Below are positions 240 through 59,403 of a stretch of DNA of 64,000 nucleotides, in pieces. The stretch spans positions 8,494,001 to 8,558,000 of the forward strand of contig NC_043020.1 of assembly GCF_006345805.1 (NCBI RefSeq). The letters run 5' to 3'. Made by a program: the position numbers and the translations under genes. The stretch is from Octopus sinensis (taxonomy: Eukaryota). Below the pieces are notes generated by a model. That model ran no database searches, was not told the DNA's origin, and was given only the letters and a program-made list of their open reading frames with translations. How positions within the stretch are numbered: the first letter of the stretch is position 1; each line of letters starts with the position of its first letter.

Positions 240-683
240 CTAACCAAATGACAGCTCCCTACACACACGGACACGTTTGTTTCTTTCTTGAATTAATTTG
301 TAATCGGCTGAAAGTTAGTGTGAGTCCTAGTTTCGTTCATGACATTTGTCCAACTCATAAGTTCGATAAGGGCCCGTACACGGAACTCTCAGCACTTGAA
401 TTACTTTTACAACATTCCATCGAAATGACTGAAACAAGTGACAGTTGTGTGTACGTATAGATACAGATACTTATCAGAAGCAACAGTGATTCAGAGTAAT
501 AAATAATACCGAATTTTGTTTTTTTGATTTCCTGTTTTGATATATAAATAACTCTACGAAGACATGTATACCAGACTGTCCAACTCTTATGCATACCTCA
601 CCCAAATATATCATCAACGTGTACGACTTTGGATTACTAGAATAAGCAGATGTTCTTACTATATATTTGGTACATAATCGTAT

Positions 684-1096
684 ACTCTTTTACTCTCTTT
701 TACTTGTTTCAGTCATTTGACTGCGGCCATGCTGGAGCACCGCCTTTAATCGAGCAACTCGACCCCCGGGACTTATTCTTTTTGTAAGCCCAGTACTTGT
801 TCTATCGGTCTTTTTTTGCCGAACCGCTAAGTGACGGGGACGTAAACACACCAGCATCGGTTGTCAAACAATGCTAGGGGGACAAACACAGATACACAAG
901 CATACACGCACACATATATATATACATATATACGACGGGCTTCTTTCAGTTTCCGTCTACCAATTCCACTCACAAGGCATTGGTCGGCCCGGGGCTATAG
1001 CAGAAGACACTTGCCCAAGGTGCCACGCAGTGTCACTGAACCCGGAGCCATTTGGTTGGTTAGCAAGCTACTTACCACGCAGCCACTCCTGCGCCT
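684..1096 (-). mobile_element. tRNA-derived SINE, family A
   Basis: The minus strand starts aggcgcaggagtggctgcgtggtaag, with an A-box-like TGGCTGCGTGG and a degenerate B box. It has an internal TA/TG tract and a (gtaaaagag)n tail. More than 10 related copies occur in the window. Confidence 0.9.
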
Positions 1097-1325
1097 ATGT
1101 CTGTGTGTGTTGAGTAAATGGCAGCATATCTGTGTGTACAAGTTTCAATACCGCTATGTATATATGTGTGCGTATATTGTGGGCTTATCTGCGTTGTCGG
1201 ACTAATGATTATGGTTTTAAAATATTATTCACTCCAAAATTTTTATTCACCCTCAGAATTATCATGAAGTTCTTTATTGTTAGTGACCGGTCACAGCTTC
1301 TTTTGAACTTGTCAGACCCCGCATA

Positions 1326-9645: not shown

Positions 9646-9742
9646 AATGAGATGAAATGTATTGCTGGTGCAGCAGCAACTAAATACTTGCAATGTATGT
9701 GTGCATCTGCTTATTATTGTTTCTCTTTGTGCATATCTTCAG

Positions 9743-9814
9743 GTGCTGTTCGCGTCGATACTGATCAAGATACACCAACTCTTCATCGATCTCTCAACTC
9801 ACGTGACACTGAAG
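9743..9814 (+). other. Candidate 72-nt internal exon of the ELK-like gene
   Basis: Polypyrimidine tract plus ttcag|G acceptor and gaag|gtcagt donor. No ATG. The phase 1-1 frame is open (AVRVDTDQDTPTLHRSLNSRDTE) and in phase with 33322 and 39129. Confidence 0.35.
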
Positions 9815-12801: not shown

Positions 12802-13197
12802 GTGGCTGTGTGGTAAGTAGCTTGCTAACCAACCACATGGTTCCGGGTTCAGTCCCACTGCGTGGCATCTTGGGCAAGTGTCTTCTGCTATAGCCCCGGG
12901 CCGACCAATGCCTTGTGAGTGGATTTGGAAGACGGAAACTGAAAGAAGCCTGTCGTATATATGTATATTTATATATGTGTTTGTGTGTCTGTGTTTGTCT
13001 CCCTAGCATTGCTTGGCAACCGATGCTGGTGTGTTTACGTCCCCGTCACTTAGCGGTTCGGCAAAAAGAGACTGATAGAATAAGTACTGGGCTTACAAAG
13101 AATAAGTCCCGGGGTCGAGTTGTTCGACTAAAGGCGGTGCTCCAGCATGGCCGCAGTCAAATGACTGAAACAAGTAAAAGAGTAAAGAAAGAGTAAA
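12802..13197 (+). mobile_element. SINE family A
   Basis: A box TGGCTGTGTGG, B-box-like GGTTCAGTCCC, full body and tail. Confidence 0.92.
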
Positions 13198-14036
13198 CAA
13201 GTGTAATAAGCAAACTAATATGGTATTTGGCACCGAACTAGGAATTTGTCGGTCCTGTACATGCCCGGCATTCATGCATCGACCCCACGAGGATAAAAAA
13301 CGAAGTTGTTAACGTTTCTGATATCACCGAACCCTATGTCCCGTCTTTAGTTTCTAGATTCGTAATTCGCTGGAATAGCCGCCATTCTTTTATATCCTCC
13401 TTCACACGCACCAGACGTAGATATCTCGTGCTGTCGAGGAGGCTGCTAAACGTGATAATTCAGCTTGCTAGAAATAGTAACCAAATCTCCCCTACTGTTT
13501 TTTTTTAAAGAAGCACGACACATCGGATAATGTCATTCTAGATACACTGTCTAAAATTAAGATGAGTTGAGAGTAGGAAGCCTCTATGTGGTCACTCAGT
13601 TTGCTAGAAATAGCAAACAAATTTGCTTCAGATAAGGCTTTGTCTTTAAAAAAAAAGAGAAGACGACTTTGAAATTAAGTTAGGTTAGTAACAGGTTGAA
13701 TAATATTGCTTTAGATGGATTGTCTGAAATTCAGATGGGTTGGTCAGCGCTAGAACCTCTTACACCAGATGTTTTCAGACTGTGTACGGTGATACTTTTA
13801 GTATTTTATCATTTTGTAAAAGCACCAAAGAATTTGACCAATACAATATTATTATTTAACTTTTATCATATTTCCTCATATTACTCATCGTAACTAACAA
13901 AAATTTGCTCCTTATAGAACCCACCATATGACGTGTAACACTCAAGTGTGTGTATATAAATAAATAAATATATATATATATATACACACACACTCAGAGA
14001 AAAGCGTTAAATGACAAGAGAGATTATGTAATGAAC

Positions 14037-16083: not shown

Positions 16084-16483
16084 GAGTGGCTGTGTGGTAA
16101 GTAGCTTGTTTACCAACCACATGGTTCCGGGTTCAGTCCCACTGTGTGGCACCTTGGGCAAGTGTCTTCTGCTATAGCCCCGGGCCGACCAATGCCTTGT
16201 GAGTGGATTTGGTAGACGGAAACTGAAAGAAGCCTGTCGTATATATGTATGCATATATATATATATGTGCGTGTGTGTGTGTTTGTGTGTCTGTGTTTGT
16301 CCCCCTAGCATCGCTTGACAACCGATGCTGGTGTGTTTATGTCCCCGTAACTTAGCGGTTCGGCAAAAGAGACCGATAGAATAAGTACTGGGCTTACAAA
16401 GAATAAGTCCCGGGGTCGATTTCATCGACTAAAGGCGGTGCTCCAGCATGGCCGCAGTCAAATGACTGAAACAAGTAAAAGAG
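16084..16483 (+). mobile_element. SINE family A
   Basis: Full-length match to the other copies. Confidence 0.92.
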
Positions 16484-16534
16484 TATATATATATATATCC
16501 CTCAATTAATCTATCTGTCTAAACATATAAGGGT

Positions 16535-24217: not shown

Positions 24218-24274
<57 letters not shown>

Positions 24275-24920
24275 GTTCTTTACAGTGTTGTTAGCCTGGT
24301 GTATTAACAGAGAGCTTATAAAGTATTTTGCTCGGATTGATAATCCTTCACCAACACGTTTACTACAGAAGTAGGTTGTGATTTGAGGGATATTTGTCAG
24401 TTATGTCCATCAGGTAGTCGAACCACGTAAAGGTTCGTGGTTGCTCGTAAGGGCTCGTCTGAAGTCAGCTCTCAATAGACCAGGGATCTTGGTTTACAAT
24501 TATGTTTTCTTTTGACACATTCTACCAGTATACGAAGTTTCAAATTGTTTAGTTAACTAGGAAAATCTGGCCTTCAAACTGAAAAGATCCTAGACCATTC
24601 AGAACTATTGGGTTGGTGCATAATTATTGCGGCTTTTTTTTTTTTTTTCAAACAAATTTTATTCATCAAAAACAAACATCTTTAAATGATTATTCCGGTC
24701 AAACCGTCATTTAACGATGCTTTTGTTAAATATTGTTTTTGTTGAATAAATTTGTTGGAAAAAAAAAAAAAAGCCGCAGTAATTATGCACCAACCCAATA
24801 TTATTCCATGAACACTCGGGTATTTTTTTCCCTAACATTTGAGATTTGGCACAAAAAAGCTTCTGCTCTGCTCTGCTCTGCTCTGCTCTGCTCTGCTCTG
24901 CTCTGCTCTGCTCTGCTCTG

Positions 24921-24955
<35 letters not shown>

Positions 24956-25043
24956 AATCTTTGCTTCCTTTAATGCCGACTTTAGTATCAATGTGTGTAC
25001 GTGCATGCGTACGTCTGGTCTACATGTGTGTGTTTGTGAGTGT

Positions 25044-25080
<37 letters not shown>

Positions 25081-25557
25081 CCAGGCAGTGTCAGCTTAGG
25101 GCTGTGGGCAAGTACACACTTGGTCCATTGTTAGGGCCAAGCGAGAGTAGCAGGTAGTGGTGGTGGTGGTGGCGGTGGCGTGTTCATTACCGGGAGCTGG
25201 GGGGGAGAGGATAGGTGCAGTGAAGGGGGGGGGGGGGGATTAGTAGCTGATAAATTCCAACAACAACCACAACAACAACGAGACCAATGTTTCGTTGTCT
25301 GGATGTCGTCACGCCCACATTTAATAGATAGGGAGGAGATAGACGAACCCCACACATACGGACACCTTGGGCCGGCGTTATAGACACACAGACAGACAGA
25401 TAAGATAGGACAGAGAGTGCGTGTTTAAAAAAAAAAAAAAACTAGACATTCTGTGCATACTCCCACTTACGTTTGTGTGTGTATATATATAAACATTACT
25501 TTATACATACATGCAAACAGACACATATAGACCTATATATATATATATATATTATAT

Positions 25558-25595
<38 letters not shown>

Positions 25596-26308
25596 GTTCT
25601 TTACAGTGTTGTTAGCCTGGTGTATTAACAGAGAGCTTATAAAGTATTTTGCTCGGATTGATAATCCTTCACCAACACGTTTACTACAGAAGTAGGTTGT
25701 GATTTGAGGGATATTTGTCAGTTATGTCCATCAGGTAGTCGAACCACGTAAAGGTTCGTGGTTGCTCGTAAGGGCTCGTCTGAAGTCAGCTCTCAATAGA
25801 CCAGGGATCTTGGTTTACAATTATGTTTTCTTTTGACACATTCTACCAGTATACGAAGTTTCAAATTGTTTAGTTAACTAGGAAAATCTGGCCTTCAAAC
25901 TGAAAAGATCCTAGACCATTCAGAACTATTGGGTTGGTGCATAATTATTGCGGCTTTTTTTTTTTTTTTTCAAACAAATTTTATTCATCAAAAACAAACA
26001 TCTTTAAATGATTATTCCGGTCAAACCGTCATTTAACGATGCTTTTGTTAAATATTGTTTTTGTTGAATAAATTTGTTGAAAAAAAAAAAAAAGCCGCAG
26101 TAATTATGCACCAACCCAATATTATTCCATGAACACTCGGGTATTTTTTTCCCTAACATTTGAGATTTGGCACAAAAAAGCTTCTGCTCTGCTCTCTCTC
26201 TCTCTCTCTCTCAAGTTCAATCTTTGCTTCCTTTAATGCCGACTTTAGTATCAATGTGTGTACGTGCATGCGTACGTCTGGTCTACATGTGTGTGTTTGT
26301 GAGTGTAC

Positions 26309-26339
<31 letters not shown>

Positions 26340-26785
26340 CCAGGCAGTGTCAGCTTAGGGCTGTGGGCAAGTACACACTTGGTCCATTGTTAGGGCCAAG
26401 CGAGAGTAGCAGGTAGTGGTGGTGGTGGTGGCGGTGGCGTGTTCATTACCGGGAGCTGGGGGGGGGAGGATAGGTGCAGTGAAGGGGGGGTGATTAGTAG
26501 CTGATAAATTCCAACAACAACCACAACAACAACAAGACCAATGTTTCGTTGTCTGGATGTCGTCACGCCCACATTTAATAGATAGGGAGGAGATAGACGA
26601 ACCCCACACATACGGACACCTTGGGCCGGCGTTATAGACACACAGACAGACAGATAAGATAGGACAGAGAGTGCGTGTTTAAAAAAAAAAAAAAACTAGA
26701 CATTCTGTGCATACTCCCACTTACGTTTGTGTGTGTATATATATAAACATTACTTTATACATACATGCAAACAGACACATATAGA

Positions 26786-26787
<2 letters not shown>
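24275..26787 (+). repeat. Tandem duplication of a ~1.2-1.3-kb unit (24275-25533 and 25596-26787)
   Basis: Near-identical sequence offset by 1321 bp. Breakpoints lie in (TA)n tracts. The copies differ mainly in microsatellite length. Confidence 0.95.
24608..24798. mobile_element. Mariner-derived MITE (191 bp), duplicated at 25929-26119
   Basis: TA TSD and TIR ttgggttggtgcataatta(t/c)tgcggc. Confidence 0.9.
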
Positions 26788-26831
<44 letters not shown>

Positions 26832-26875: not shown

Positions 26876-27589
26876 GGAGTGGCTGTGTGGTAAGTAGCTT
26901 ACTAAACAATCACATGGTTCCGGGTTCAGTCCCACTGCGTGGCATCTTGGGCAAGTGTCTTCTGCTATAGCCCCCGGGTCGACCAATGCCTTGTGAGTGG
27001 ATTTGGTTGACGGAAACTGAAAGAAGCCTATATAGGTGCAGGAGTGGCTGTGTGGTAAGTAGCTTGCTAGCCAACGACATGGTTCCGGGTTCAGTCCCAC
27101 TGCGTGGCATCTTGGGCAAGTGTCTTCTGCTATAGCCCCCGGGCCGACCAATGCTTTGTGAGTGGATTTGGTAGACGGAAACTGAAAGAAGCCTATATAG
27201 GTGCAGGAGTGGCTGTGTGGTAAGTAGCTTGCTAACCAACCACATGGTTCCGGGTTCAGTCCCACTGCGTGGCATCTTGGGCAAGTTTCTTCTGCTATAG
27301 CCCCGGGCCGACCAATGCCTTGTGAGTGGATTTGGTAGACGGAAACTGAAAGAAGCCTGTCGTATATATGTATATATATGTGTGTGTGTCTGTGTTTGTC
27401 CCCCTACCATTGCTTGACAACCGATGCTGGTGTGTTTACGTCCCCGTAACTTAGCGGTTCGGCAAAAAGAGACCGATAGAATAAGTACTGGGCTTACAAA
27501 GAATAAATCACGGGTCGATTTGCTCAACTAAAGGCGGTGCTCCAGCATGGCCGCAGTCAAATGACTGAAACAAGTAAGAGAGTAAGAGT
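26876..27589 (+). mobile_element. SINE family A with triplicated 165-bp head
   Basis: ggagtggctgtgtgg at 26876, 27041 and 27206. Only the third copy continues into body and tail. Confidence 0.92.
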
Positions 27590-28679: not shown

Positions 28680-29425
28680 ATAAATGAAAGAATGGAGTCG
28701 AACGACGATTGCCCACACGGAGTCCATAGTGATAATGACTCATTATCACTATGGACTCCGTGTGGGCAGTCATCTAAAAGTTTTTTGTTCGTCATGATGC
28801 TGACGATTGCCACACGGAGTCCATAGTGATAATGACTCATTATCACTATGGACTCCGTGTGGGCAGTCATCTAAAAGTTTTTATTCGTCATGATGCTGAC
28901 GATTGCCCACACGGAGTCCATAGTGATAATGACTCATTATCACTATGGACTCCGTGTGGGCAGTCATCTAAAAGTTTTTATTCGTCATGATGCTGACGAT
29001 TGCCCACACGGAGTCCATAGTGATAATGACTCATTATCACTATGGACTCCGTGTGGGCAGTCATCTAAAAGTTTTTGTTCGTCATGATGCTGACGATTGC
29101 CCACACGGAGTCCATAGTGATAATGACTCATTATCACTATGGACTCCGTGTGGGCAGTCATCTAAAAGTTTTTATTCGTCATGATGCTGACGATTGCCCA
29201 CACGGAGTCCATAGTGATAATAACTCATTATCACTATGGACTCCGTGTGGGCAGTCATCTAAAAGTTTTTGTTCGTCATGATGCTGACATAAGTTCCTTG
29301 TCTTTCCTGATGAGAAGGCGGCATAATGCACCCCTTATTCCTTCGGAATTAGGAATATGCAGTCTTCGAAACATATGTCGAGAATAAAGGAATTTTGTTA
29401 AATCGTCGTTCGACTCCATTCTTTC

Positions 29426-29431
<6 letters not shown>
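28680..29431 (+). mobile_element. TIR-bounded element: six 97-bp hairpin repeats plus a hammerhead ribozyme
   Basis: Perfect 31-bp inverted termini at 28680-28710/29401-29431. Units start at 28704, 28802, 28898, 28995, 29092 and 29189. Confidence 0.85.
29291..29395 (+). ncRNA. Type-I hammerhead ribozyme with intact catalytic core
   Basis: CTGATGA at 29307-29313. Stem II is gaaggc-g-gcata/tatgc-a-gtcttc. GAAAC at 29368-29372. Stem III is the palindrome ACATATGT. GTC at 29377-29379. Stem I is tttc/gaga plus aagttcctt/aaggaattt. Confidence 0.85.
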
Positions 29432-33160: not shown

Positions 33161-33323
33161 GTGAAAAACTAAACTGTTCCAGTTTTCATATTTGTTTATA
33201 TTTTTCTCTTATTTTTTGTTTGTTGTGTTTTGTTTTTTTATTTCGCTTTGAGTAATTTTTATTGCATCATTTTTGTTTTCTAAATTAATTAAATTTTCTT
33301 TCTTTCTTTCTTTCTTTCTAGAA

Positions 33324-33444
33324 ATGGTTCAGTCTCCTACATCTCCCACACTCTCTGATTCCAGCCGATATTCAGACATTATGGGTGCCGAGTATCATCT
33401 CACAAAGCGACTTTGCACACAAGCAGCTCACACAAAATCCAAAG
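33324..33444 (+). CDS. Predicted upstream coding exon of the ELK-like gene (exon 33322-33444)
   Basis: Strong polypyrimidine acceptor (ctag|AA) and donor aag|gtaagc. Encodes MVQSPTSPTLSDSSRYSDIMGAEYHLTKRLCTQAAHTKSK. Phase 1 joins g|gt ATG in frame with the ETS exon. Confidence 0.55.
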
Positions 33445-33499
33445 GTAAGCCACCATTTATATTAGAAACCCCCCTCTCTCCCCCCCTCTCTCTCTCTCT

Positions 33500-33537
<38 letters not shown>

Positions 33538-33672
33538 TATAACATAAGAGGGATCCGCCATCTGAATGTGGCTAGGGTCAGGGCGGGGTGGTGGGGGTGT
33601 TACTGATGCATTTAGCCCCAGGCGAACATCGACGTCACCAGAAGCGCCCAGAGATTTATTATTGTATATATA

Positions 33673-34064
33673 TACTCTTTACTCTTTTACTTGTTTCAGT
33701 CATTTGACTGCGGCCATGCTGGAGCACCGCCTTTAGTCCGAGCAAATCGACCCCGGGACTTATTCTTTGTAAGCCCAGTACTTATTCTATCGGTCTCTCT
33801 TTTGCCGAACCGCTAAGTGACGGGGACGTAAACACACCAGCCAGCATCGGTTGTCAAGCAATGCTAGGGGGACAAACACACACACACAACACATACATAT
33901 ATACGACAGGCTTCTTTCAGTTTCCGTCTACCAAATCCACTCACAAGGCATTGGTCGGCCCGGGGCTATAGCAGAAGACACTTGCCCAAGATGCCACGCA
34001 GTGAGACTGAACCCGGAACCATGTGGTTGGTTAGCAAGCTACTTACCACACAGCCACTCCTGCG

Positions 34065-34067
<3 letters not shown>
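33673..34067 (-). mobile_element. SINE family A
   Basis: Full-length reverse-complement match. Confidence 0.92.
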
Positions 34068-34101
<34 letters not shown>

Positions 34102-34102
<1 letters not shown>

Positions 34103-35770
34103 TGCATTTGTCATCTTGCAGGCTTATTCATACTAAATACATTAACCCAACACATGACATTGGCCTATACCATGACGATGGTTTTATTATTTCCCACGAG
34201 CATGATGGGCACACACTATGTAGATTTAGAAAAAAACTTATCTCTACCGTTAACCAATTAGAATTTAAAATCTCAGTAGCTACTAACCTCTCTACAGTAG
34301 ACTATTTAGACGTGTCCCTAGATCTAAACACTTCCTCATATAAACTTTTTTATAAACAGAACGAGAAGCTTACATATGTAAACAGGCAGTCTTGTCACCC
34401 TCCCGCCATATTCATAAACCTAGTAGCCAACATTAGTAGAAGAGTGTCTTACCTCTCTTCTAAAGAAATTTTCGAGAGGGCAGCCCGCTACTATAATAAG
34501 GCCCTAGCCAATTGCAGGTTTAAAGATGAGTTAACATATAATCCCTCTAACACTTATCATGATATTAAGGATAGATATGGCTAAGGAAAATAATTTGATT
34601 TGCCCTTCCCTTTTCACTCAATGTAAAAACGAACATTGGTAGGATATTTTTGACTCTCCTTGACAAACATTTTCCTGTAAATCACAAATATAGAAAATTT
34701 TTCAACAGGCGATCAGGGAAATTGCCGTATAGCTGCTGCCCCACCACAGTTTCATTACACGTGGCCAACATAAAGAGCCTGAAGCTAGATGCAACTGTTG
34801 CGATCCAGGAGCCTGTCCACTCGAGAAATAGTGCATGACCAAGGCAGTTGTATATGAGACGAAAGTCACTACAACCCTAAATAATAATAATAGTAATAAT
34901 AATACACCGGGGAAAATACCTATATTAGATTATGTGAAGGGGAGTTTAAAAAACGCTATGTCAACCACATAGCCTCGTTACTACGTAAGGACAAGAGCAA
35001 GGTCACAAAGTTAGCCAGCCGCGTGAGGGCTTTGAAAAAGAATAAAACGCCATGTACGATTAAATGGAAAATAATCGAAAAACCCACATATGTGAATGGA
35101 CCAAAGAAATGTAGTCTTTGCTTGGCCGAAAGAACCCAGATTCTGTTCAGATCAAAAGTCCCCAACTTAGTATTGAACTCGAGATCTGAAATTTTCAGTA
35201 GTTGCGGACACATGCAAAAATATATTTTGAAGAACTGGACAATCCCATCCATCCCAGATTGATTTGACATTGCCCCGACCTTATTATTTAAAAGACTAAG
35301 GATGTTAGATCGCACACTACTATCGTCCCCCATCCTTTATTTTAGTATTTCTTTAGGTTTATTTTTTATACTTTATAAATTTTTACATTCCCGACATTTC
35401 TTATATCTATACCGTTACATTTCTACTTCATATTTTATACATTTGTACTCTCCTTACACAATTTACATTCAATTTCGTACATTATTTACATTTACATCAG
35501 GTCTGTTGGTTTCGTTTTCCGGTTAGAAGTTAGGATTTTCTATACGCTACCATTTTCTCACGTTTTTCGCGTATTCTCACGTCCCATGCCATATTTAAAG
35601 TTCTTAGTTCAGTACGAAGAGTGATCTGCGCCTGGAGAACGTGTCTGGATTTCCAGACACGTGAAACTATTAGTAACGCCCCGAAAATATGTATTGTGGT
35701 CCTAAAACAGGAATATTTGACTCTCGCCAGATGGAGTGTTCTCTTTGTTGAATTATAAAACGAACCAATA
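34102..35770 (+). mobile_element. Decayed Penelope-like retroelement (RT + GIY-YIG, Naiad-like) with HHR-bearing 3' region
   Basis: RT motifs GLYHDDG, VDYLDVSL and SCHPP. Cys linker RCNC..CPL..C. VVY...YIRLCEGEFKKRYVNH, CSLC and LNSRSEIFSSCGH follow. Frameshifts and stops are present. Confidence 0.85.
35627..35680 (+). ncRNA. Degenerate hammerhead ribozyme of the Penelope-like element
   Basis: CTGGAGA (A6>G), perfect 10-bp stem II acgtgtctgg/ccagacacgt, GAAAC, stem III ACTATTAGT, GTA site. Confidence 0.65.
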
Positions 35771-35828
35771 CACACACACACGTATGTGTGTGTGTATGAA
35801 TCTGTGCATGTTTTTATTTATATGTGGC

Positions 35829-35863
<35 letters not shown>

Positions 35864-35864
35864 G

Positions 35865-37134
35865 TTGGGTTGGCAAGAAAATAATTTCGTTTTTCGCAAA
35901 TAATTACGATTTTTTAAATGACTTTTATCAATGTTGTGATTTTTTTTCCTTTTGACATTTGATAGCCGTTACTTTTAGCTTACTTTAGAAGCAAATTGCG
36001 CATAATTTTGTTAATAGCTGTTAGTTCAGTGTCAATTTTAACATGCAGTACAAAAACGACGACTTTCGCCATATTTTGCTTTTTTACTTCCGGGGTCACA
36101 AAGAGATATGTGAAGTCTATGGTGTTGATTGCTTAACAACGCATATGTCAGAAATGGCTTTAAAAATTCCGTTCTGAGGATTTTTCACTCAAAGATGACC
36201 AACGTTCTGAGGATTTTTCACTCAAAGATGACCAACGTTCTGGTCGACCTACCGAAGTTGATAACCGAATTACAACTATAATTCAATCTGATTGCGAGAG
36301 ATTGCAGAGAGGTTAAATGTATCACACACAACAATTGAAAATCACTTAAAATGTCTTGGACTCTTAAAGAAGCTCTATATTTTGGTTCCACATCAATTGA
36401 AAGAGATTCACTTTACACCACGAATCAATATTTGCGATATGCATCTCAAACGCAATGAAATCGACCCCTTTTTTTTTTTTATCGAATCATCACTGGTGAT
36501 GAAAAATGGAGTGTCTACAATAACATCAATCAAAAACGATCATGGTCCAAGTGTAAAAACATCGAAGCTGAATTGCATAAAAAAAAAAGGTCATGCTGTC
36601 AATTTGGTGGGATTACAAAGGTGTTGTGTATTTTGAGCTGCTTCCAAGGAACCAAACGATCAATTCACATGTTTACTGTCAACAACTAATGAAACTGGAG
36701 GAAGCAATCAAAGAAAAACGACCAGAATTGACAAATCCTAAAGGAATAGCGTTCCACCATGACAACGCTAGACCACATACGTTTTTGCTAACTTGTGAAA
36801 AATTATTGGAGCTTGGTTGGGAAGTGATGTCACGTCCACCATATAGCCCATACCTTGCACCATCAGATTACCATCTATTTCGAAGTTTGCAAAATTCCTT
36901 GAATGGTAAAACTTTCAATAATGATGAAAACCTGAAATTAAACGTCCTTCAGTTTTTGGCTGATAAGGACCAGAAGCTCTACGAGCACTAAACCAGGAAG
37001 TTGCCAGAAAGATGGCAAAAGCTCGCCGAACAAAATGGAAAATATATATAATTGATAAAGTTCATTCTTTGTATGGAAAAAAAATGACTTTTATTTCATA
37101 CTAAAAAACCGAAATTACTTTCTTGCCAACCTAA
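35865..37134 (+). mobile_element. Full-length (1270 bp) decayed mariner, DD34D, mellifera-like
   Basis: TIR tt(g/a)ggttggcaagaaa(a/g)taatttcg with TA on the right. N-terminus MQYKNDDFRHILLFYFR from 36043. HDNARPH to YSPYLAPSD spacing is exactly 34 residues. Frameshifts and a 33-bp in-frame duplication at 36171-36236. Confidence 0.95.
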
Positions 37135-37140
37135 TACATA

Positions 37141-37317
37141 TTAGGAAGTTAAAGGTTATGACCATTCATAGAGTGACCATTGGTTCCGCACTTTGCAGTA
37201 TAGTGACTCGTCAGACTTAAATGGCCGAAGTCTGATGAGTTGCCTACACTGCTAAGCACTTTATGGGAGCGAAACCAATGGTCACTCTATGACCGGCCAT
37301 AACTTTTAACTTCCTAA
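37141..37317. ncRNA. 177-bp fold-back with hammerhead cores on both strands
   Basis: 45-bp arms with 4 mismatches. Plus strand: CTGATGA 37232-37238, GAAAC 37271-37275, caatg, GTC. Minus strand: CTGACGA...GGAAC-caatg-GTC. Confidence 0.8.
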
Positions 37318-37382
37318 AAATATATATTACTGCTCTAATTCCTTAGAGTATGCTTTTTTCCGGATATATGAACTACTGACGC

Positions 37383-37423
<41 letters not shown>

Positions 37424-37698
37424 TAACAATTGAGGATAAAATCTTTAAAAGAAATTATCAGTAGTTAGCGTGAAAAACCTCGTAAGAGAAAAAATCCGTA
37501 AATTTTTCCACTTTGAAAATATTCATTTATATTGAGAGTACTACTATTCGTAGATACCACACGCTAAAGAGGGACCAATGCGGTCAAAACTACTAAAATA
37601 AACAAAATTTGACCGAATGCAAAACTCCAAAGCAAATCATTTAAAAAAAGAATTTAGTTACATATCACCTGTGATTTCGCAATTAATGCAGAATATGC

Positions 37699-37761
<63 letters not shown>

Positions 37762-38066
37762 ACACGCCAGAAGCGATAAATTATAGGACTCAATACAGAT
37801 GTAAGAGTGTTCCTTAATACATTATCTCTGAAAGGCTCCGATTTCTAGTAATCTGAGTTATTTATTAACTTCCGATCATCGGCTGATAGAGTAAGTCTGC
37901 TTTTTCTTTTAAAGTATTCCCTGTTCGAATATTTCTGGAAATATGTAACTTAAGTTTAAAGAAAACGCTTATCGTTTTTATGTTACTTTGTCGTTCACGA
38001 AGGTTTTTTAAACAAAATAGCATAAAGTTAAGCGTTTTCTCCAAAATTATCTTTTTTTTTATCTTC

Positions 38067-38452
38067 TACTTGTTTCAGTCATTTTGACTGCGGCCATGCT
38101 GGAGCACCGCCTTTAGTCGATCAAATCGACCCCGGGACTTATTCTTTGTAAGCCCAATACTTATTCTATCGGTCTCTTTTTGCCGAACCGCTAAGTGACG
38201 GAGACGTAAACACACCAGCATCGGTTGTCAAGCAATGCTAGGGGGACAAACACAAACACACACGCATACATATATATATACATATATACGACAGGCTTCT
38301 TTCAGTTTCCGTCTACCAAATCCACTCACAAGGCATTGGTCGGCCCGGGGCTATAGCAGAAGACACTTGCCCAAGATGCCACGCAGTGGGACTGAACCCG
38401 GAACCATGTGGTTGGTTAACAAGCTACTTACCACACAGCCACTCCTGCGCCT
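38067..38452 (-). mobile_element. SINE family A
   Basis: Full-length reverse-complement match. Confidence 0.92.
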
Positions 38453-38649
38453 ATGACACTTATATTTCAAGTTTCAAAAAGATGTTTCATATTTCAAGCA
38501 ATACATATTTCAAAAGAGAAGCAGACTCGGCTTAGCTGATGATGACTGGAAACGAGTAACTCTGAGTTTTGGAAATTGAAGCCTTTCATTTATTGTGTGT
38601 GTGCTACGTTCTGGGGTAGAAAGGGCTCCTTAGCCGTAGTGAAGGCAAT

Positions 38650-38651
38650 CT

Positions 38652-38684
<33 letters not shown>

Positions 38685-38816
38685 GTTTAACGTCCGTTTT
38701 CCGCGCTAGCACGGGTTGGACGGTTCGACCGGGGTCTGGGGAGCCAGGGGCTGCCCCAGGCTCCAGTCTGATCTGGCAGTGTTTTCCGACAGCTGGATGC
38801 CCTTCCTATCGCCAAC
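38650..38816 (-). mobile_element. Retroposon 3' tail with (GAT)n end, probably RTE-related; relatives at 52843-52973 and 63408-63524 (+)
   Basis: Shared ggaagggcatc...gaaccgtccaaccc(a/g)tgctagc...aaaacggacgttaaa-(gat)n-like sequence. Confidence 0.65.
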
Positions 38817-39130
38817 CTTACAATAAATCACTCGGTCCGTAGCTTAGAAATACTGGGTTGACGTCCAGCGGGAACAGCTTTGTTTCATGGAGGAGGAAAG
38901 ATCTTCTTTAGTACTTGGTTGTACAATGCTTTCCAATGTGTGTGGTAGTGGCGCGCGCACACATTAGCCATTTGAAAAGACTATGAAAGTCTCGACCACG
39001 GTCGAACAATGATGATGATGATGATGACGTTCTTATTCGTTTTCTATGTCTTTTTTTAGTATTTGTTGTTTCACTTTTTTTTTTATTTTTGTCCTGACTC
39101 ATTTGCTGTTTTCCTGTTTTTCCTACAGGT

Positions 39131-40300
39131 ATGGAATCCAACATCACACTTTGGCAGTTCCTTCTGGAACTTCTCCTCAGCCACCAGCATCGCAACATTA
39201 TCCAGTGGACCAACAACGACGGTGAATTCAAGCTGGTGAACGCCGAGGAAGTTGCCAAACTCTGGGGCTTGCGCAAAAACAAGAACAACATGAACTATGA
39301 CAAGCTCAGCCGGGCCCTTCGCTATTACTACGACAAGAACATCATCAAAAAGGTCATGGGCCAAAAATTCGTCTACAAATTCGTTTCGTTCCCCGAAATT
39401 GAAAAAATCGAAAGTAAAATTCCGTTCAAAGTGAAAATGGAAAGCCTAGCCATGGAGTATGGCCAACGGGTCTATCCGCATTTCGTTGCACCCACCAATC
39501 TAGAGAACAGAGCTGCTGCAAGTGTTTGGCATCATCCTTCTAATTCTGCTGCTGTCGCCGCTGCTTCGATGGGGAGCGAACACAGATCTGGGATAAAGCT
39601 AGAGTCACACGAAAGGGATTCCAGCAAGTCTCAGTATTCAGAAAAGAAAGTCGATTTTCCGTCGCCATTGTCGTTATCATCAACGTCATCACTTTCGTCA
39701 TATTCATCGTCTCCGACGTCGTCGACGTCATCGCCCCTGCTGACACCTACGTCATCGTTGTCATCACCGTCGTCGTCGTCTTCTTCGCCGATGTCATCGT
39801 CATCGCCTTCTTCTTTGTCCACGTCGTTATCTTTGTCGTCGTCATCGTCGGCGGCGGAGGAACGGCGTGAAGCGGCACATCGCAAGCAGAGCCACAGCCC
39901 GTCGTCCTCGTCCTCGGTGTTGACCCCGGCACGACCCAAACCCATCCCGCTCAACCTGCACGTCGACGCGCCGTCCTCTTCTGCTCTGTCCCCGGGGACG
40001 TCACTTCCGATCCCGAGTCCCACGCTCAAAGTGTCATCATCCTATTCCAACATCCACACGCCCATCTTTCTGGCGTCTCCCCTCCTTAGTCATCGGACAC
40101 CCTTCCTACATTTCTGGAGCTCGCTGAGCCCCTTGACGACGTTGAGCCCTCGCTACAATTCCGCAAGCGCCTTCCAGTTTCCTAGCTATGCCGGTCCACA
40201 CATGCCATTGACCGTGGGGCTGACCAGTTACAATAACATGGACGGTCTCTCCTCCCCCGTACTCGTCTCCTCTCCCACCAGAACTATCCCAGTGTTATAA
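39131..40300 (+). CDS. ELK: ETS-domain transcription factor, ELK1/ELK3/ELK4 (TCF) subfamily; main coding exon
   Basis: N-terminal ETS domain [11 protein letters not shown]...[33 protein letters not shown]-site-like [20 protein letters not shown] and FQFP match TCF C-termini. Acceptor cctacag|gtATG at 39128/39129. Confidence 0.97.
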
Positions 40301-41347: not shown

Positions 41348-41373
41348 GTTTTTTGTTTTTTGTTTTTTTTGTA

Positions 41374-41446
41374 TTTTCAATTTCACAAAAGTAAGCAAAA
41401 AGGGGAAATAATTGTATAAAGTTATGTGGATGATGATGAGTATATA

Positions 41447-41478
<32 letters not shown>

Positions 41479-42095
41479 TCTCATCGGAGTGTGTGCGTGT
41501 GTTTATATATGTATGTATATGTATATATATGAATATATATATATATATATATTGTAGGTATGTATATATATATGTATGTATGTATATATATATATGTATG
41601 TATATATATATATGTATATATATGTATGTATGTATATATATATAGTATATATGTATGTATATATATGTAGATATGTATATATATATATATGTAGATATGC
41701 ATGTATATATATATGTAGATATGTATATATATGTATATATATATGTATATATATATATGTATATGTATGTATATATATATAGTATATATGTATGTATATA
41801 TATATGTATATATATATATATATATGTATATGTATGTTATATATATATAGTATATATGTAGTATATATATATATTATATATATATATACGTGTGTGTATA
41901 TATATATATATACATATATAATGTAAAATAGACTGGCTATTTGTTTGTGGTTTTTTTGTTTCTTTTTTTTTTCGTTTGTTGTCATTTTGGATTTTTTTGT
42001 TTGTTTTTATTTGTTTGTTTTTTTTTTGTTTTTCAATTTCACAAAAGTAAGCAAAAAGGGGAAATAATTGTATAAAGTTATGTGGATGATGATGA

Positions 42096-42131
<36 letters not shown>

Positions 42132-42184
42132 TCATCGGAGTGTGTGCGTGTGTTTATATTATGTATGTATATGTATATATATGA

Positions 42185-42218
<34 letters not shown>

Positions 42219-42280
42219 ATATATATGTATGTATATATATATATATGTATGTATATATATATATATATATATATATAGAT

Positions 42281-42321
<41 letters not shown>

Positions 42322-42695
42322 TGTATATATGTATATATATTATATATGTAGATATGCATGTATATATATATGTATATATATGTATATATATATATATATA
42401 TATATAGATATATATATATATATGTATGTATGTATATATATATAGTATATATGTATGTATATATATATGTATATATATATATATATATGTATATGTATGT
42501 ATATCTATATAGTATATATGTATGTATATATATATATATATATATATATACGTGTGTGTATATATATATATATACATATATAATGTAAAATAGACTGGCT
42601 ATTTGTTTGTGGTTTTTTTGTTTCTTTTTTTTTTCGTTTGTTGTCATTTTGGATTTTTTTGTTTGTTTTTATTTGTTTGTTTTTTTTTTGTTTTT
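41374..42695 (+). repeat. Tandem duplication of a ~656-bp microsatellite-rich unit
   Basis: caatttcacaaaagtaagcaaaaagggg at 41378 and 42034, with the remaining unit co-linear. Confidence 0.9.
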
Positions 42696-42824
42696 CCCCC
42701 CTCCCTTCTTTCCTTGACGAAAAAATCCTAGCAGCGATTTAAAAGCAAATTTGTGTCCTGAACTGTGGTCTTTTTATTTTTAGTTTGTGTTTCCAGAGAT
42801 AAAAATCACACACACGCACACACA

Positions 42825-51542: not shown

Positions 51543-52347
51543 GTACTCTTACTTGTTTCAGTCATTTGACTGCGGCCATGCTGGAGCACCGCCTTTAGTC
51601 GAGCAAATCGACCCCAGGACTTATTCTTTGTAAGCCTAGTACTTATTCTATCGGTCTCTTTTTGCTGAACCGCTAAGTGACGAGACGTAAACACACCAGC
51701 ATCGGTTGTCAAGCGATGTTGGGAGGAAAAACACATTCATGCATATATACGATGGGCTTCTTTCAGTTTCCGCCTACCAAATCCACTCACAGGGCATTGG
51801 TCGGCCCGAAGCTATAATAGAAGACACTTGCCCAAGATTCCACGCAGTGGGCTGAACCCAGAACCATGTGGTTGATAAGCAAGCCACTCCTGCGCCTGAA
51901 GCAATTGCTGTGAGATGTGATTAAAGCCTGTTCGTTCCACCTCGCTTTATAAATTCATATACTCTTTTACTTGTTTCAGTCATTTGACTGCGGCCATGCT
52001 GAAGCACCGCCTTTAGTCGAGCAAATCGACCCCGGGACTTATTCTTTGTAAGCCCAGTACTTATTCTATCGGTCTCTTTTGCCGAACCGCTAAGTGACGG
52101 GGACGTAAACACACCAGCATCGGTTGTCAAGCAATGCTAGGGGGACAAACACAGACACACAAACATATACACACACACATATATAACGACAGCTTCTTTC
52201 AGTTTCCGTCTACCAAATCCACTCACAAGGCATTGGTCGGCCCGGGGCTATAGCAGAAGACACTTGCCCAAGATTCCACGCAGTGGGACTGAACCCGGCA
52301 CCATGTGGTTGGTTAGCAAGCTACTTACCACACAGCCACTCCTGCGC
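51543..52347 (-). mobile_element. Two adjacent SINE family A copies (51543-51897, 51960-52347)
   Basis: Reverse-complement matches. The first has a deletion in its head. Confidence 0.9.
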
Positions 52348-52706
52348 TTGTATATATGTATATATTTACACACATTCACTTGCTGGCTTCTGATATTATT
52401 AATAATTCATTCTTATTCTGCAGATTTTGTTAAATAAAGAAACAACGACGAATGATTTATTCTGGAAATCAACTAACATAATAAGAACAGAGAGACTCGG
52501 TCATCACACTAACGAACTCTCCTCCTATATGGAAAGGTTCTAAACCAGACATGGGCAAGTTGCGGCCTGCAGAACTTCTTGAATTGTTTTTAGGAGTGTT
52601 GCTTGCCTGTCACGTCTCATGCGGGCCTTTGTCGAGAATGGTTGTCCTTACCTGTTTTAAACAAGCCAAAGTGACTATCCTTTTATTGTCAAACCCGTAT
52701 ATTCTC

Positions 52707-57539: not shown

Positions 57540-57695
57540 CTCTTTTACTCGTTTCAGTCATTTGACTGCGGCGATGCTGGAGCACCGCTTTTAATCGAGC
57601 CAATCGACCCCGGGACTTATTCTTTTGTAAGCCCAGTACTTATTCTATCGGTCTATTTTGCCGAACTGCTAAGTGACGGGGAAACAATGTGCCAT

Positions 57696-57805
57696 GCTTA
57701 CAGCGCCTAGGTTTCCCAAGCAGTCACCCATCTAAGTACTAACTAGGCTCGACGTTGCTTAACTTCGTTGATCAGACGAGAACCGGTGCTTTCAACGTGA
57801 TATGG
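57696..57805 (-). pseudogene. 5S rRNA pseudogene (lacks ~8 nt at the 5' end)
   Basis: The minus strand reads ccatatcacgttgaaagcaccggttctcgtctgatcaacgaagttaagcaacgtcgagcctagttagtacttagatgggtgactgcttgggaaacctaggcgctgtaagc. This is co-linear with metazoan 5S rRNA and is a single dispersed copy. Confidence 0.92.
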
Positions 57806-59403
57806 AGGCGCAGGAATGGCTGTATGGTAAGTACCTTGCTTACCAACCACATGCTTCCGGGTTCAGTTCCGCTGCTAAGCATTTCGTCCAGCGTGCTACC
57901 AATTCTGCCAGCTCGCCACCTTCTTTTCGCACATAATAATAAAGAAGTATATTTTGTCTTTTCCTTGGCTCAGTGACTGTACTGCGGCCAAGCTGGAGCA
58001 CTGCCTTATAAGGTTTTAGTCGAACAAATCGATTCCAGTACTTCTTTATAAGTCTGGTACTAATTCTATCGTTTTCTTTTTCCGGAGAGTAAAGTTAGGA
58101 GGTTGGGACATAAACAACCCAATACCGGTTGTCGAGTAGGGAGGCATGCAGAAACACTCAGACACACGCATACGTATATATATATATATTCATTTTTAGG
58201 AACGATGAATCTCGAAGCAGATAAAGCTATAAATAACAGCGTGTAAATATATATATTGAGTTAAAAAAGCCTTTGGATAGGAAAAGTCGAATGTAGGTGG
58301 TATGTTTGCGATGGGCTTCCACACAGTTTCCGTCTGTCAAATTCACTCACAGGCATTGGTTAACCCGGGGTTATAACAAAAAACTCTTGCCCGAGTGGCA
58401 CGCAGTGGGACTGAACCTAAAACCACGTAGTTGCTAAGCGAGCTCCTTACCCACACAGCCATTGAACCATGAAAGCGTTAGCATTGGACTTTGGGAGTCC
58501 CACAAAGATTTCTTTCCAAAGAATTTTCCCGAATAAAAGAAGGTGGAAAGGAACAGGTGGAAATTTTGTCGGTGAACAGGTCGCGGTTTGAAAGCGACGA
58601 AAATATTTTGACACAAATTAAATTTAAATGTTGAGGTGAATCTAACAGTTTTTGTGTGTTCCTAAATGGCTTAGAAACACCTTCCACGCTGTAACTTTTT
58701 AAGAAAGTTATAGAGAAACGATTCGTGGCGGCGAAAAGATGGATGCTGGGGACACTCTTGTCGTTATGGCAACGTCCCTTGGCGGTGCCTTGGTAGAGTC
58801 GATAAAGATGTCAGAAAGAATGCTTCGTGCTAATCGTTCCGACACACTACGCTCAGAACGAATTTGAACTCAGAACGTAGCGGCAGACGAAACACCGCTA
58901 AGCATTTAGCCCAGTAAGCGTAAGCTAAAGTTTCTGCTAGCTCGCCGCCTTAAGGAAAGGTTATACCTTCAAAGGCGTTTGCAAGTGACGGCTAAGGCTT
59001 CTTTAGAGCTAAAAATTACATTATTCAATAAAATATTCCTTTTCCTTAAGCTATAGTGTGTAAAAGTTTGAGGAGTTTTGGTGATTATTTCAATAAAACA
59101 TAATCGAGTCGCTCTATTTTCAAAGCTGGAACCAATCGTACAAAAATATTGTTTGTGATTTGATTAGCATAAACTAATTTTCTAAATTTTCACTAAATTG
59201 TTTCATCCTCGCTATATTTTTTTTTGTCCCTCTGTCTTGCTCATCGTTTTTCAAACTGTGGGTCCCGACCCTTCAATCGGCCGCGACAAAAAAAAAAAAA
59301 GAAGAAAGGAATGCAAGTGGGAGCAAAGTGCAGAATATAACCCAGCGTTTTTCAAATTGTGGGTCCCGACAAAAAAGTTTGGAAAACGCTGATGTAGCTA
59401 ATG

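What the first reader, a model, noticed from the sequence alone, without database searches (positions are those of the whole stretch)
37141..37317. Ambisense twin hammerhead in which arm differences re-pair with the shared spacer
Seen: the plus-strand HHR has an intact core, stem III ACCAATGGT, a GUC site and stem I agt/act plus atggccg/cggccat. The minus-strand HHR (CTGACGA, GGAAC) uses the same spacer in reverse, ggccatt/aatggtc. Three of the four arm mismatches fall exactly where each arm must match the spacer in its own orientation. Established: ribozymes in both polarities are typical of viroid-like RNAs. Inference: selection or templated correction has maintained both polarities.
Basis: partly seen in the sequence, partly recalled or inferred. 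Interest (0 to 1): 0.88.

Follow-up and report, generated by a model that had tools for sequence, protein, structure and literature searches.

The report
Inverted hammerhead pair in octopus intron
This is a 177-base hairpin in an intron of an Octopus sinensis gene, made of two tail fragments of a hammerhead-ribozyme-carrying retroelement joined head to head; it is most likely an ordinary, decaying by-product of retroelement insertion and not a viroid-like two-strand ribozyme kept by selection.

Summary
The sequence features are real. Window 37141-37317 is an exact 177-nt imperfect inverted repeat. Its right arm carries a type I hammerhead (HHR) on the + strand with an intact core. Its left arm carries a related HHR on the - strand. 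Both can use the central spacer as the distal 5' strand of stem I.

The "twin ribozyme under selection" reading is weak:
- The minus-strand core reads GGAA where GAAA is required (A13 to G, window 37186).
- Helix II is poor in both arms.
- No Rfam hammerhead model is reached.
- A transcript holding both arms prefers the rod by about 56-61 kcal/mol.

The window is Octopus sinensis, in the last intron of an Elk-3-like gene. The hairpin sits in a (TA)n tract, next to a Penelope-like element (PLE) remnant that has its own HHR. Another HHR element 8 kb away also carries an inverted copy of its tail.

PLE insertions are known to be 5'-truncated, often with an adjacent inverted truncated copy, and to target microsatellites. 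The spacer core GGCC is its own reverse complement, which gives both polarities half of the helix for free.

No family copies or orthologous site could be retrieved, so the covariation test remains undone.

The parts
37141..37317 (.). Whole element: a 177-nt imperfect inverted repeat (rod hairpin). It consists of two head-to-head 5'-truncated copies of an HHR-bearing retroelement tail, with 3' ends (…AACTTCCTAA) pointing outward.
37228..37317 (+). Unit A (right arm, 90 nt, AAGT…CCTAA): type I hammerhead with an intact core. CUGAUGA 37232-37238; helix II/loop 2 37239-37270 (32 nt, weak); GAAA 37271-37274; helix III ACC-AAU-GGU 37274-37282; C17 at 37283 with the predicted cut between 37283 and 37284; 34-nt tail 37284-37317 containing ACU and CGGCCAU (37294-37300).
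37141..37218 (-). Unit B (left arm, 78 nt, read on the minus strand): hammerhead-derived copy. CUGACGA 37214-37208; helix II 37207-37188 (20 nt, weak, 12 nt shorter net); GGAA 37187-37184 in place of GAAA (A13 to G at 37186); helix III 37184-37176; nominal cut between 37175 and 37174; tail 37174-37141 with AAUGGUC. Predicted to be catalytically dead.
37219..37227 (.). Shared 9-nt spacer AAATGGCCG (the hairpin loop). It gives AUGGCCG as the distal 5' strand of stem I for unit A and, read in reverse, GGCCAUU for unit B. The core GGCC is palindromic and is the probable joining point of the two copies.
37135..37140 (.). Left flank TACATA. TA is the target duplication of the adjacent mariner. Before the mariner inserted, the flank was (CA)n(TA)n (35837-35864).
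37318..37330 (.). Right flank AAATATATATTAC. Together with the left flank it shows that the hairpin sits inside a (TA)n-type tract.

Best explanation
The 177-nt hairpin is an insertion relic of a hammerhead-bearing retroelement mobilised by Penelope-like-element (PLE) machinery, either a PLE tail or a non-autonomous 'non-LTR retrozyme'.

Proposed steps:
1. Two severely 5'-truncated copies of the element's 3' end (about 90 and 78 nt) were made in opposite orientation at one break in a (TA)n microsatellite. This is the known PLE pattern of an inverted 5'-truncated copy next to the direct one. It is plausible because a PLE protein cuts and extends both DNA strands.
2. The two copies were joined in the middle at the near-palindromic distal part of stem I (…AUGGCC…).
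3. Because GGCC is its own reverse complement, the junction supplies a 5' stem-I strand to both polarities.
4. The remaining fit comes from differences that are neutral in an ordinary hammerhead: two C-to-U changes opposite G and one change in the internal loop. Alternatively the two arms were copied from two slightly different family members.
5. Since then the locus has decayed: about 10% arm divergence, indels in helix II, and A13G in one core.

In its present context, the sense strand of an Elk-3-like intron, the RNA would fold as a long hairpin and not as a ribozyme.

Shown: the anatomy, the host and intron location, the microsatellite setting, the neighbouring PLE remnant and second HHR element, the fold energies, and the broken core. 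Inferred: the double-strand-primed origin, the joining at the palindrome, and the lack of present function.
For: - Host and position: the window is 100% identical to Octopus sinensis CM016882.1. The hairpin lies in the last intron (33447-39127) of an Elk-3-like gene.
- Flanks: (CA)n(TA)n on the left, interrupted later by a mariner at 35865-37134, and A(TA)n on the right. Hydra-clade and other PLEs insert into (TA)n/(CA)n (PMC8557442).
- PLE nearby: at 34100-35262 there is a frameshifted ORF with the CxCX5C linker, a GIY-YIG-like region and CxxC/CxH motifs described for Hydra-clade PLEs. Its homologues carry an RT-like N-terminus. Its 3' region holds a decayed HHR (35632-35675), and the O. bimaculoides orthologue of that HHR keeps an intact core.
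- Same architecture 8 kb away: a second HHR element has a perfect 29-nt inverted copy of its own tail at its 5' end (28682-28710 against 29401-29429). That copy is joined to the body at a 7-nt microhomology and ends in (TA)n.
- Literature: PLE insertions are highly 5'-truncated and often have an inverted 5'-truncated copy immediately adjacent. HHRs lie near the 3' end, and 30-40-nt tails occur (PMC8557442). A purified PLE protein cleaves and extends both strands (PMC11167929). L003 shows head-to-head copies of a homologous ORF.
- Palindromic GGCC/GGCC distal stem I is also seen in the HH9 consensus aligned to unit A.
- Decay: A13G, helix II z-scores of +1.1 and -0.1, and 8 substitutions in 77 aligned positions spread evenly, plus indels.
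- Fold competition: rod -98/-104.5 kcal/mol against -42/-43 with the HHR fold enforced.
Against: - No other copy of this HHR family was found. None appears in 216 kb of octopus DNA, in two metagenome scans or in two viral scans. The parent element, its native 5' stem-I strand and its link to a PLE are therefore inferred, not seen.
- The neighbouring PLE remnant has a different HHR sequence, so it is not the parent.
- A simple null model (perfect repeat plus 5 random substitutions) gives the observed minus-strand helix in 0.5% of trials or fewer. Some non-random cause is needed. The two causes offered here, neutral G.U transitions or two source variants, are untested.
- No clear target-site duplication is visible.
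Confidence: 0.6

Rival explanations
1. One ordinary hammerhead-bearing copy inserted first. A later local DNA-level event (fold-back or template switching during replication or repair at the GGCC palindrome) made the inverted copy. The arms then drifted apart, and the fit of the left arm to the reversed spacer is partly luck.
For: Substitutions between the arms are evenly spread at about 10%, 6 of 59 outside and 2 of 18 inside helix II, as expected for drift after a single duplication. The palindromic spacer core would favour a fold-back. The two C-to-U changes are neutral with respect to the native pairing (read from the sequence).
Against: Drift from a perfect repeat yields a helix of 7 bp or more in only 0.5% of simulations. 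The second HHR element in the window shows that inverted tails arise at insertion, because its inverted tail is 100% identical to the direct one. That favours an insertion-time origin here too.
Confidence: 0.2
2. One reading: a functional ambisense twin hammerhead. Both strands are transcribed and self-cleave, as in viroid-like RNAs, and selection or templated correction keeps each arm matched to the shared spacer.
For: Both polarities can draw a complete stem I using the one spacer, and this is unlikely under simple drift. The rod shape with facing ribozyme halves resembles viroid-like RNAs (general knowledge of Avsunviroidae).
Against: The minus core has G in place of invariant A13. By the classical mutagenesis of the hammerhead core (own knowledge), core changes of this kind lower cleavage by orders of magnitude. 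Helix II is weak in both arms. No Rfam hammerhead threshold is reached. The rod is 56-61 kcal/mol more stable than any fold containing the ribozyme. Only a single copy was seen in 216 kb. The element sits in chromosomal DNA inside an intron amid other transposon debris.
Confidence: 0.06
3. A miniature inverted-repeat DNA transposon (a mariner-type MITE with TTAGG termini) that happens to carry hammerhead sequence.
For: The termini TTAGG…CCTAA match the first 5 nt of the adjacent mariner's inverted repeat TTAGGTTGG. The left flank is TA. The element is a palindromic hairpin of MITE size.
Against: The right flank is AA, not TA. Similarity to the mariner repeat stops after 5 nt. No second copy occurs in 216 kb, whereas other repeats recur many times. 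The arms are complete hammerhead tails, which a transposase-binding repeat does not explain.
Confidence: 0.05
4. Whatever its origin, the intronic hairpin now serves as a precursor of small RNAs (hairpin or miRNA-like) from the Elk-3-like pre-mRNA.
For: It forms a very stable duplex of about 80 bp on the sense strand of an intron. Weak, sub-threshold matches to miRNA hairpin models only reflect the shape.
Against: No miRNA family reaches its threshold (best 27 bits against 90-99). The stem is much longer than a typical pre-miRNA. No expression or conservation data could be obtained.
Confidence: 0.05

Closest known systems
Penelope-like element (PLE) insertions with hammerheads in their pseudo-LTRs/3' ends (Cervera & de la Pena 2014, PMC4209133; Craig et al. 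2021, PMC8557442; Frangieh et al. 2024, PMC11167929)
   Same: A type I hammerhead lies near the 3' end and is followed by a tail of about 34 nt. There is extreme 5' truncation, an inverted 5'-truncated partner copy adjacent at the 5' side, and insertion into a (TA)n/(CA)n tract. A Hydra-clade-like PLE remnant with its own hammerhead lies in the same intron.
   Different: No reverse transcriptase/endonuclease ORF is attached to this unit. Both copies are cut down to the ribozyme and tail only, so the two ribozymes share one stem-I strand. That arrangement is not described in the papers read. The parent element was not found.
Metazoan non-LTR retrozymes (Cervera & de la Pena 2020, PMC7229834; Li et al. 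2026 preprint, 10.64898/2026.07.22.740005)
   Same: Non-coding, low-GC sequence carrying a canonical-style type I hammerhead with a short helix III. Such elements are reported in molluscs and thought to be mobilised by PLEs. The total size (177 nt) is within the 170-400 nt range.
   Different: Retrozymes are head-to-tail tandem repeats with one polarity of ribozyme, and they give circular RNAs. This is a single head-to-head pair with no tandem copy, so there are no two same-sense cleavage sites to release a monomer.
HH9-type intronic hammerheads of amniotes (Rfam RF02275)
   Same: HH9 is the best, though sub-threshold, Rfam match. It shares CUGAUGAG, AGCGAAACC, a short helix III of the CC…GG-UC type, a GGCC/GGCC distal stem I, and a sense-strand intronic location.
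   Different: The score is 13.8 bits against a gathering score of 52. The proximal stem I is 3 bp where HH9 has 6, and loop 2 is about 18 nt longer. No cross-species conservation could be shown. The hammerhead is embedded in an inverted repeat.
Viroid-like circular RNAs with hammerheads in both polarities (Avsunviroidae and relatives)
   Same: A rod-like fold in which ribozyme halves of opposite polarity face each other, and a helix III that would favour double-hammerhead action.
   Different: This is chromosomal DNA in an animal intron. One of the two cores is mutated. There is no evidence of circular or replicating RNA. The dual polarity is explained by inverted duplication.
Twin-priming inversions of LINE-1 insertions (own knowledge, not tested here)
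   Same: Two cDNAs primed from the two sides of one target break are joined at a microhomology, giving an inverted segment next to a direct one.
   Different: In L1 both cDNAs copy one RNA, with one primed internally. Here both arms end at the element's 3' terminus, as expected if both DNA strands primed on the 3' end of a template.

Membership tests
Hammerhead ribozyme, type I | Conserved core C3-U4-G5-A6-N7-G8-A9 and G12-A13-A14, with an A15.1-U16.1 pair and an N-U-H cleavage triplet | tested here: met
   Met for the + strand unit: CUGAUGA, GAAA and GUC are all present. It is found by a strict descriptor with 0 hits in 60 surrogate windows.
Hammerhead ribozyme, type I | The same core on the minus-strand unit | tested here: not met
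   CUGACGA is acceptable, but the second half reads GGAA (A13 to G, window 37186). Shifting the register breaks the 15.1-16.1 pair and stem I.
Hammerhead ribozyme, type I | Three helices around the core, with a stable helix II closed by G10.1-C11.1 | tested here: inconclusive
   Stem I (3 + 7 bp) and helix III (3 bp) are present in both units, and so is G10.1-C11.1. Helix II is a 32-nt or 20-nt segment that folds no better than shuffles (z +1.1 and -0.1). The minimum-energy fold of each isolated unit is not the hammerhead fold.
Hammerhead ribozyme, type I | Score at or above the Rfam gathering threshold of a hammerhead model | tested here: not met
   The only hit is Hammerhead_HH9 at 13.8 bits (threshold 52), on the + arm. 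There is no hit for Hammerhead_1 or for the minus arm.
Hammerhead ribozyme, type I | Self-cleavage at the predicted site | not testable with these tools
   This needs in vitro transcription of each strand, alone and as dimers.
PLE-derived insertion / non-LTR retrozyme | Hammerhead near the element's 3' end, 5' truncation, and an adjacent inverted 5'-truncated copy | tested here: met
   Both arms end in the same 34-nt tail after the cleavage site, and they meet at their 5' ends. The pattern is as described in PMC8557442. A parallel case lies at 28682-29429.
PLE-derived insertion / non-LTR retrozyme | Insertion into (TA)n/(CA)n microsatellite | tested here: met
   The flanks are (CA)n(TA)n…TACATA on the left and AAATATATATTA on the right.
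PLE-derived insertion / non-LTR retrozyme | The same sequence present as the pLTR/3' end of an RT + GIY-YIG element, or as head-to-tail tandem monomers, elsewhere in the genome | not testable with these tools
   No eukaryotic genome collection can be searched by DNA here. There are no copies in window, L001 or L002, and the public scans were empty. The six-frame protein search was also empty.
Viroid-like RNA with ambisense hammerheads | Functional ribozyme cores in both polarities | tested here: not met
   The minus core is mutated at A13.
Viroid-like RNA with ambisense hammerheads | Existence as a circular, replicating RNA and not as a host DNA locus | tested here: not met
   The sequence is part of Octopus sinensis chromosome CM016882.1, inside an annotated gene's intron. 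RNA forms could not be examined.
Mariner-type MITE | Terminal inverted repeats flanked by a TA target duplication, in multiple dispersed copies | tested here: not met
   The left flank is TA but the right flank is AA. The element is a single copy in 216 kb.

The most novel reading that the evidence does not exclude
The hairpin may be the unit of an undescribed class of DNA-encoded, ambisense hammerhead elements in cephalopods. Both transcripts would self-process using one shared palindromic stem-I strand. The clustered arm differences would be true orientation-specific compensations, and the A13G change would be a recent lesion in this copy only.
Probability: 0.06. Interest if true: 0.7.

Novelty: new member of a known kind. 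Interest (0 to 1): 0.27.

Why it matters
As it stands, the finding adds cephalopods to the animals whose genomes carry several hammerhead families tied to Penelope-like elements. There are at least three distinct motifs in 64 kb. The one literature search on hammerheads and octopus turned up no paper reporting them.

It also gives a clean, small example of how the PLE habit of making an inverted truncated copy can produce what looks like a two-strand ribozyme. This is a useful caution for motif-based searches for viroid-like elements in genome data.

If the selection reading were true, it would be a DNA-resident counterpart of ambisense viroid-like RNAs in an animal. That would be of real interest for the origin of such RNAs. 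The evidence here does not favour it.

Tried and rejected
Searches for family copies that found nothing:
- Window search with up to 3 mismatches: only the two arms.
- BLAST against 119 kb of O. sinensis and 97 kb of O. bimaculoides.
- Two viral-contig and two metagenome-contig pattern scans.
- A search of the protein collection with the six-frame translation of the element, hoping to catch short ORFs called on octopus read assemblies.

Orthologous site:
- The O. bimaculoides alignment runs through the PLE remnant and the mariner up to window 37139. It then enters a 5.9-kb run of N, so the site is unreadable.
- The O. vulgaris gene range is too long to be served, and its other isoforms are not on record.
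- Exact-ORF look-ups for two window ORFs found nothing.

Homologues of the PLE-like ORF: the contigs L003 and L004 showed no convincing hammerhead with my descriptor.

Test for uneven divergence between arms, which would have pointed to two source variants: not significant.

Readings rejected:
- Assembly artefact from a palindromic read: the arms differ by 10% and by indels, and unique flanks continue on both sides.
- Known miRNA: only shape-driven sub-threshold hits.
- The neighbouring PLE remnant as the parent: its hammerhead sequence is different.

Full report
**What is in the sequence**

Window 37141-37317 is exactly an inverted repeat. The outer 49 nt of each arm are 90% complementary. 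The complete 177 nt folds into one nearly continuous rod on either strand, at -98.2 and -104.5 kcal/mol with z-scores of -14 and -16 against shuffles.

Read as two units with their 5' ends at the centre and their 3' ends outward, the arms align over their whole length. There are 8 substitutions in 77 aligned positions (about 10%), spread evenly, plus 14 gap positions that all lie in helix II/loop 2.

**The plus-strand unit**

The right arm is a type I hammerhead on the + strand:
- distal stem I: AUGGCCG (37221-37227) with CGGCCAU (37294-37300)
- proximal stem I: AGU/ACU
- CUGAUGA at 37232-37238
- a 32-nt helix II segment
- GAAA at 37271-37274
- helix III ACC-AAU-GGU
- GUC, with the predicted cut after 37283
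- a 34-nt tail ending …AACTTCCTAA

A strict descriptor finds this motif and one other (at 29306) in the real window. It finds none in 60 first-order Markov surrogates of the window, so the motif is not a chance match.

Rfam places it nearest to Hammerhead_HH9, but at only 13.8 bits against a gathering score of 52. Helix II is weak: three pairs, a G.G mismatch, two more pairs and a large loop. It folds no better than shuffled sequence.

**The minus-strand unit**

The left arm, read on the minus strand, is a shorter relative of unit A:
- CUGACGA at 37214-37208
- a 20-nt helix II segment
- GC-GGAA-CC where unit A has GC-GAAA-CC

The invariant A13 is therefore G (window 37186). Shifting the register does not rescue it, because that breaks the 15.1-16.1 pair and stem I. 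From the classical mutagenesis of the hammerhead core (my own knowledge, not a tool result), core changes of this kind reduce cleavage by orders of magnitude. Rfam reports no hammerhead match on this arm at any E-value up to 10. The statement that both polarities carry a ribozyme is therefore only half true. One core is intact and one is broken.

**The spacer claim**

The 9-nt loop AAATGGCCG (37219-37227) gives AUGGCCG to the plus unit and, in reverse, GGCCAUU to the minus unit. The minus unit's 3' strand AAUGGUC pairs with it, and the helix can be extended to 9 bp with two G.U pairs.

The outer arms differ at five positions, not four. Three of them (arm positions 21, 24, 25) fall in this strand. 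Starting from a perfect repeat and adding five random substitutions, a minus-strand helix of at least 7 bp appears in 0.5% of 200,000 trials, and one of 9 bp in 0.005%.

Three points reduce its weight:
1. The helix core GGCC is its own reverse complement, so four pairs are available in both orientations whatever else happens. The HH9 consensus aligned by Rfam also shows GGCC against GGCC in distal stem I, so this palindrome may be an older trait of this ribozyme type.
2. The two C-to-U differences leave unit B's strand (UGGUCAU) still able to pair with an A-type 5' strand (AUGGCCG) through two G.U pairs. The C-to-A difference lies in what is the internal loop of the A-type fold. All three changes are therefore neutral in an ordinary single-polarity hammerhead. 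(This is read directly from the sequence.)
3. The arms may have been copied from two different family members.

**Would it work as a ribozyme here?**

In a transcript that contains both arms, the rod is 56-61 kcal/mol more stable than the best structure that contains either hammerhead fold: -98.2 against -41.9 on +, and -104.5 against -43.3 on -. On the + strand the complementary arm is transcribed first, so the CUGAUGAG segment can pair with it as soon as it emerges.

**Where it is**

Window 1-50300 is 100% identical to Octopus sinensis chromosome CM016882.1 (GCA_006345805.1). The coding exons of an Elk-3-like ETS gene map to window 9730-9813, 33321-33446 and 39128-40297 on the + strand. The hairpin therefore lies in the last intron, with the intact hammerhead on the sense strand.

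A 1270-bp mariner (35865-37134) ends 6 bp to its left. Without that later insertion, the hairpin is bounded by (CA)n(TA)n on the left and A(TA)n on the right.

**Neighbouring elements**

Upstream in the same intron, 34100-35262 (+) is a frameshifted ORF remnant. Its homologues carry an RT-like N-terminal region (…FDVKDFYPSI…, YRDDGL). The remnant itself has the CxCX5C linker, a GIY-YIG-like region, and CxxC…E and N…CxH motifs. These are the features Craig et al. describe for the Hydra clade of Penelope-like elements.

Its 3' region contains a decayed hammerhead (35632-35675, CUGGAGA with a perfect 10-bp helix II). The O. bimaculoides orthologue of that hammerhead keeps a canonical CUGAAGA…GAAA core (L002 88288-88352).

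Eight kilobases away there is a third, unrelated hammerhead at 29301-29385 (Hammerhead_1 at 19.9 bits, below the threshold of 34, with palindromic helix III ACAUAUGU). It ends a non-coding element made of six 97-nt tandem repeats. At its 5' end that element carries a perfect 29-nt inverted copy of its own 3' tail (28682-28710 against 29401-29429). The inverted copy is joined to the body at a 7-nt microhomology (GACGATT), and the element abuts (TA)n.

**How this fits what is known**

- PLE insertions are strongly 5'-truncated and often carry an inverted 5'-truncated copy immediately adjacent, which forms inverted repeats. They bear hammerheads near their 3' ends, show optional 30-40-nt tails, and prefer microsatellites (PMC8557442).
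- A purified PLE protein cleaves and extends both DNA strands, unlike R2 or LINE-1 (PMC11167929).
- Animal type I hammerheads generally have a very short helix III and act as dimers (PMC4209133; PMC7229834).
- Non-LTR retrozymes are argued to be non-autonomous derivatives of PLEs (preprint 10.64898/2026.07.22.740005).

The 177-nt hairpin is what these properties predict when both copies are truncated just upstream of the ribozyme. Two tails point outward and are joined at a short homology, which here is the palindromic distal stem I.

**Verdict**

The most likely account (confidence about 0.6) is a decaying insertion relic of a PLE-mobilised hammerhead element, not a selected ambisense ribozyme pair.

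The main weakness is that I could not obtain a single further copy of this hammerhead family, nor a readable orthologous site:
- O. bimaculoides has a 5.9-kb assembly gap starting exactly after the mariner.
- The O. vulgaris locus could not be fetched.
- All public scans were empty.

Noticed in passing
window 28682-29429: A second, unrelated hammerhead-bearing non-coding element. It has a perfect 29-nt inverted copy of its own tail, six 97-nt tandem repeats (each a long hairpin), then a type I hammerhead at 29301-29385 with palindromic helix III ACAUAUGU (Hammerhead_1 at 19.9 bits, below threshold) and a tail running into (TA)n. The inverted tail joins the body at a 7-nt microhomology, GACGATT.
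   Followed up: partly
window 34100-35262 (+) and 35632-35675; L002 88288-88352: A frameshifted ORF remnant with the Hydra-clade PLE hallmarks: CxCX5C linker, GIY-YIG-like region, and CxxC/CxH motifs. Its 3' region has a decayed hammerhead (CUGGAGA), and the O. bimaculoides orthologue of that hammerhead keeps an intact core (CUGAAGA). No Pfam match for the remnant or its homologues.
   Followed up: partly
window 35865-37134: A degenerate mariner element with Hsmar1-like inverted repeats (TTAGGTTGGCAAGAAAGTAATTTCGG) and a partial transposase (Pfam Transposase_1). It is inserted in the microsatellite 6 bp from the hairpin. It is also present, with deletions, at the orthologous site in O. bimaculoides, so it predates the split of the two species.
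   Followed up: partly
L002 88919-94854: The O. bimaculoides assembly has a 5.9-kb run of N that begins right after the mariner end, where the hairpin's orthologous site would be. Hairpins and microsatellites may be what broke the assembly.
   Followed up: no
L003 8239-9357 (-) and 10001-11119 (+): An unidentified ENA eukaryotic contig carries two head-to-head copies of a 372-aa homologue of the PLE-like ORF. This is an example of the inverted PLE arrangement at full ORF scale.
   Followed up: no
window 57695-57815 (-): A eukaryote-type 5S rRNA match (79 bits, full length). It is isolated and not in an array, so it may be a dispersed copy or a 5S-derived SINE head.
   Followed up: no
window 680-1100, 12802-13198, 16084-16498, 27194-27589, 33666-34080, 38047-38455, 51960-52357 and others: A repeat of about 400 bp is present in more than 20 copies (83-96% identity) across window and L001, presumably an abundant octopus SINE. 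One copy lies between the hairpin and the last Elk-3-like exon.
   Followed up: no
window 24222-26829 and 41349-42696: Local segmental duplications: adjacent blocks of about 650-700 bp at 94-99% identity to each other, of unknown nature.
   Followed up: no
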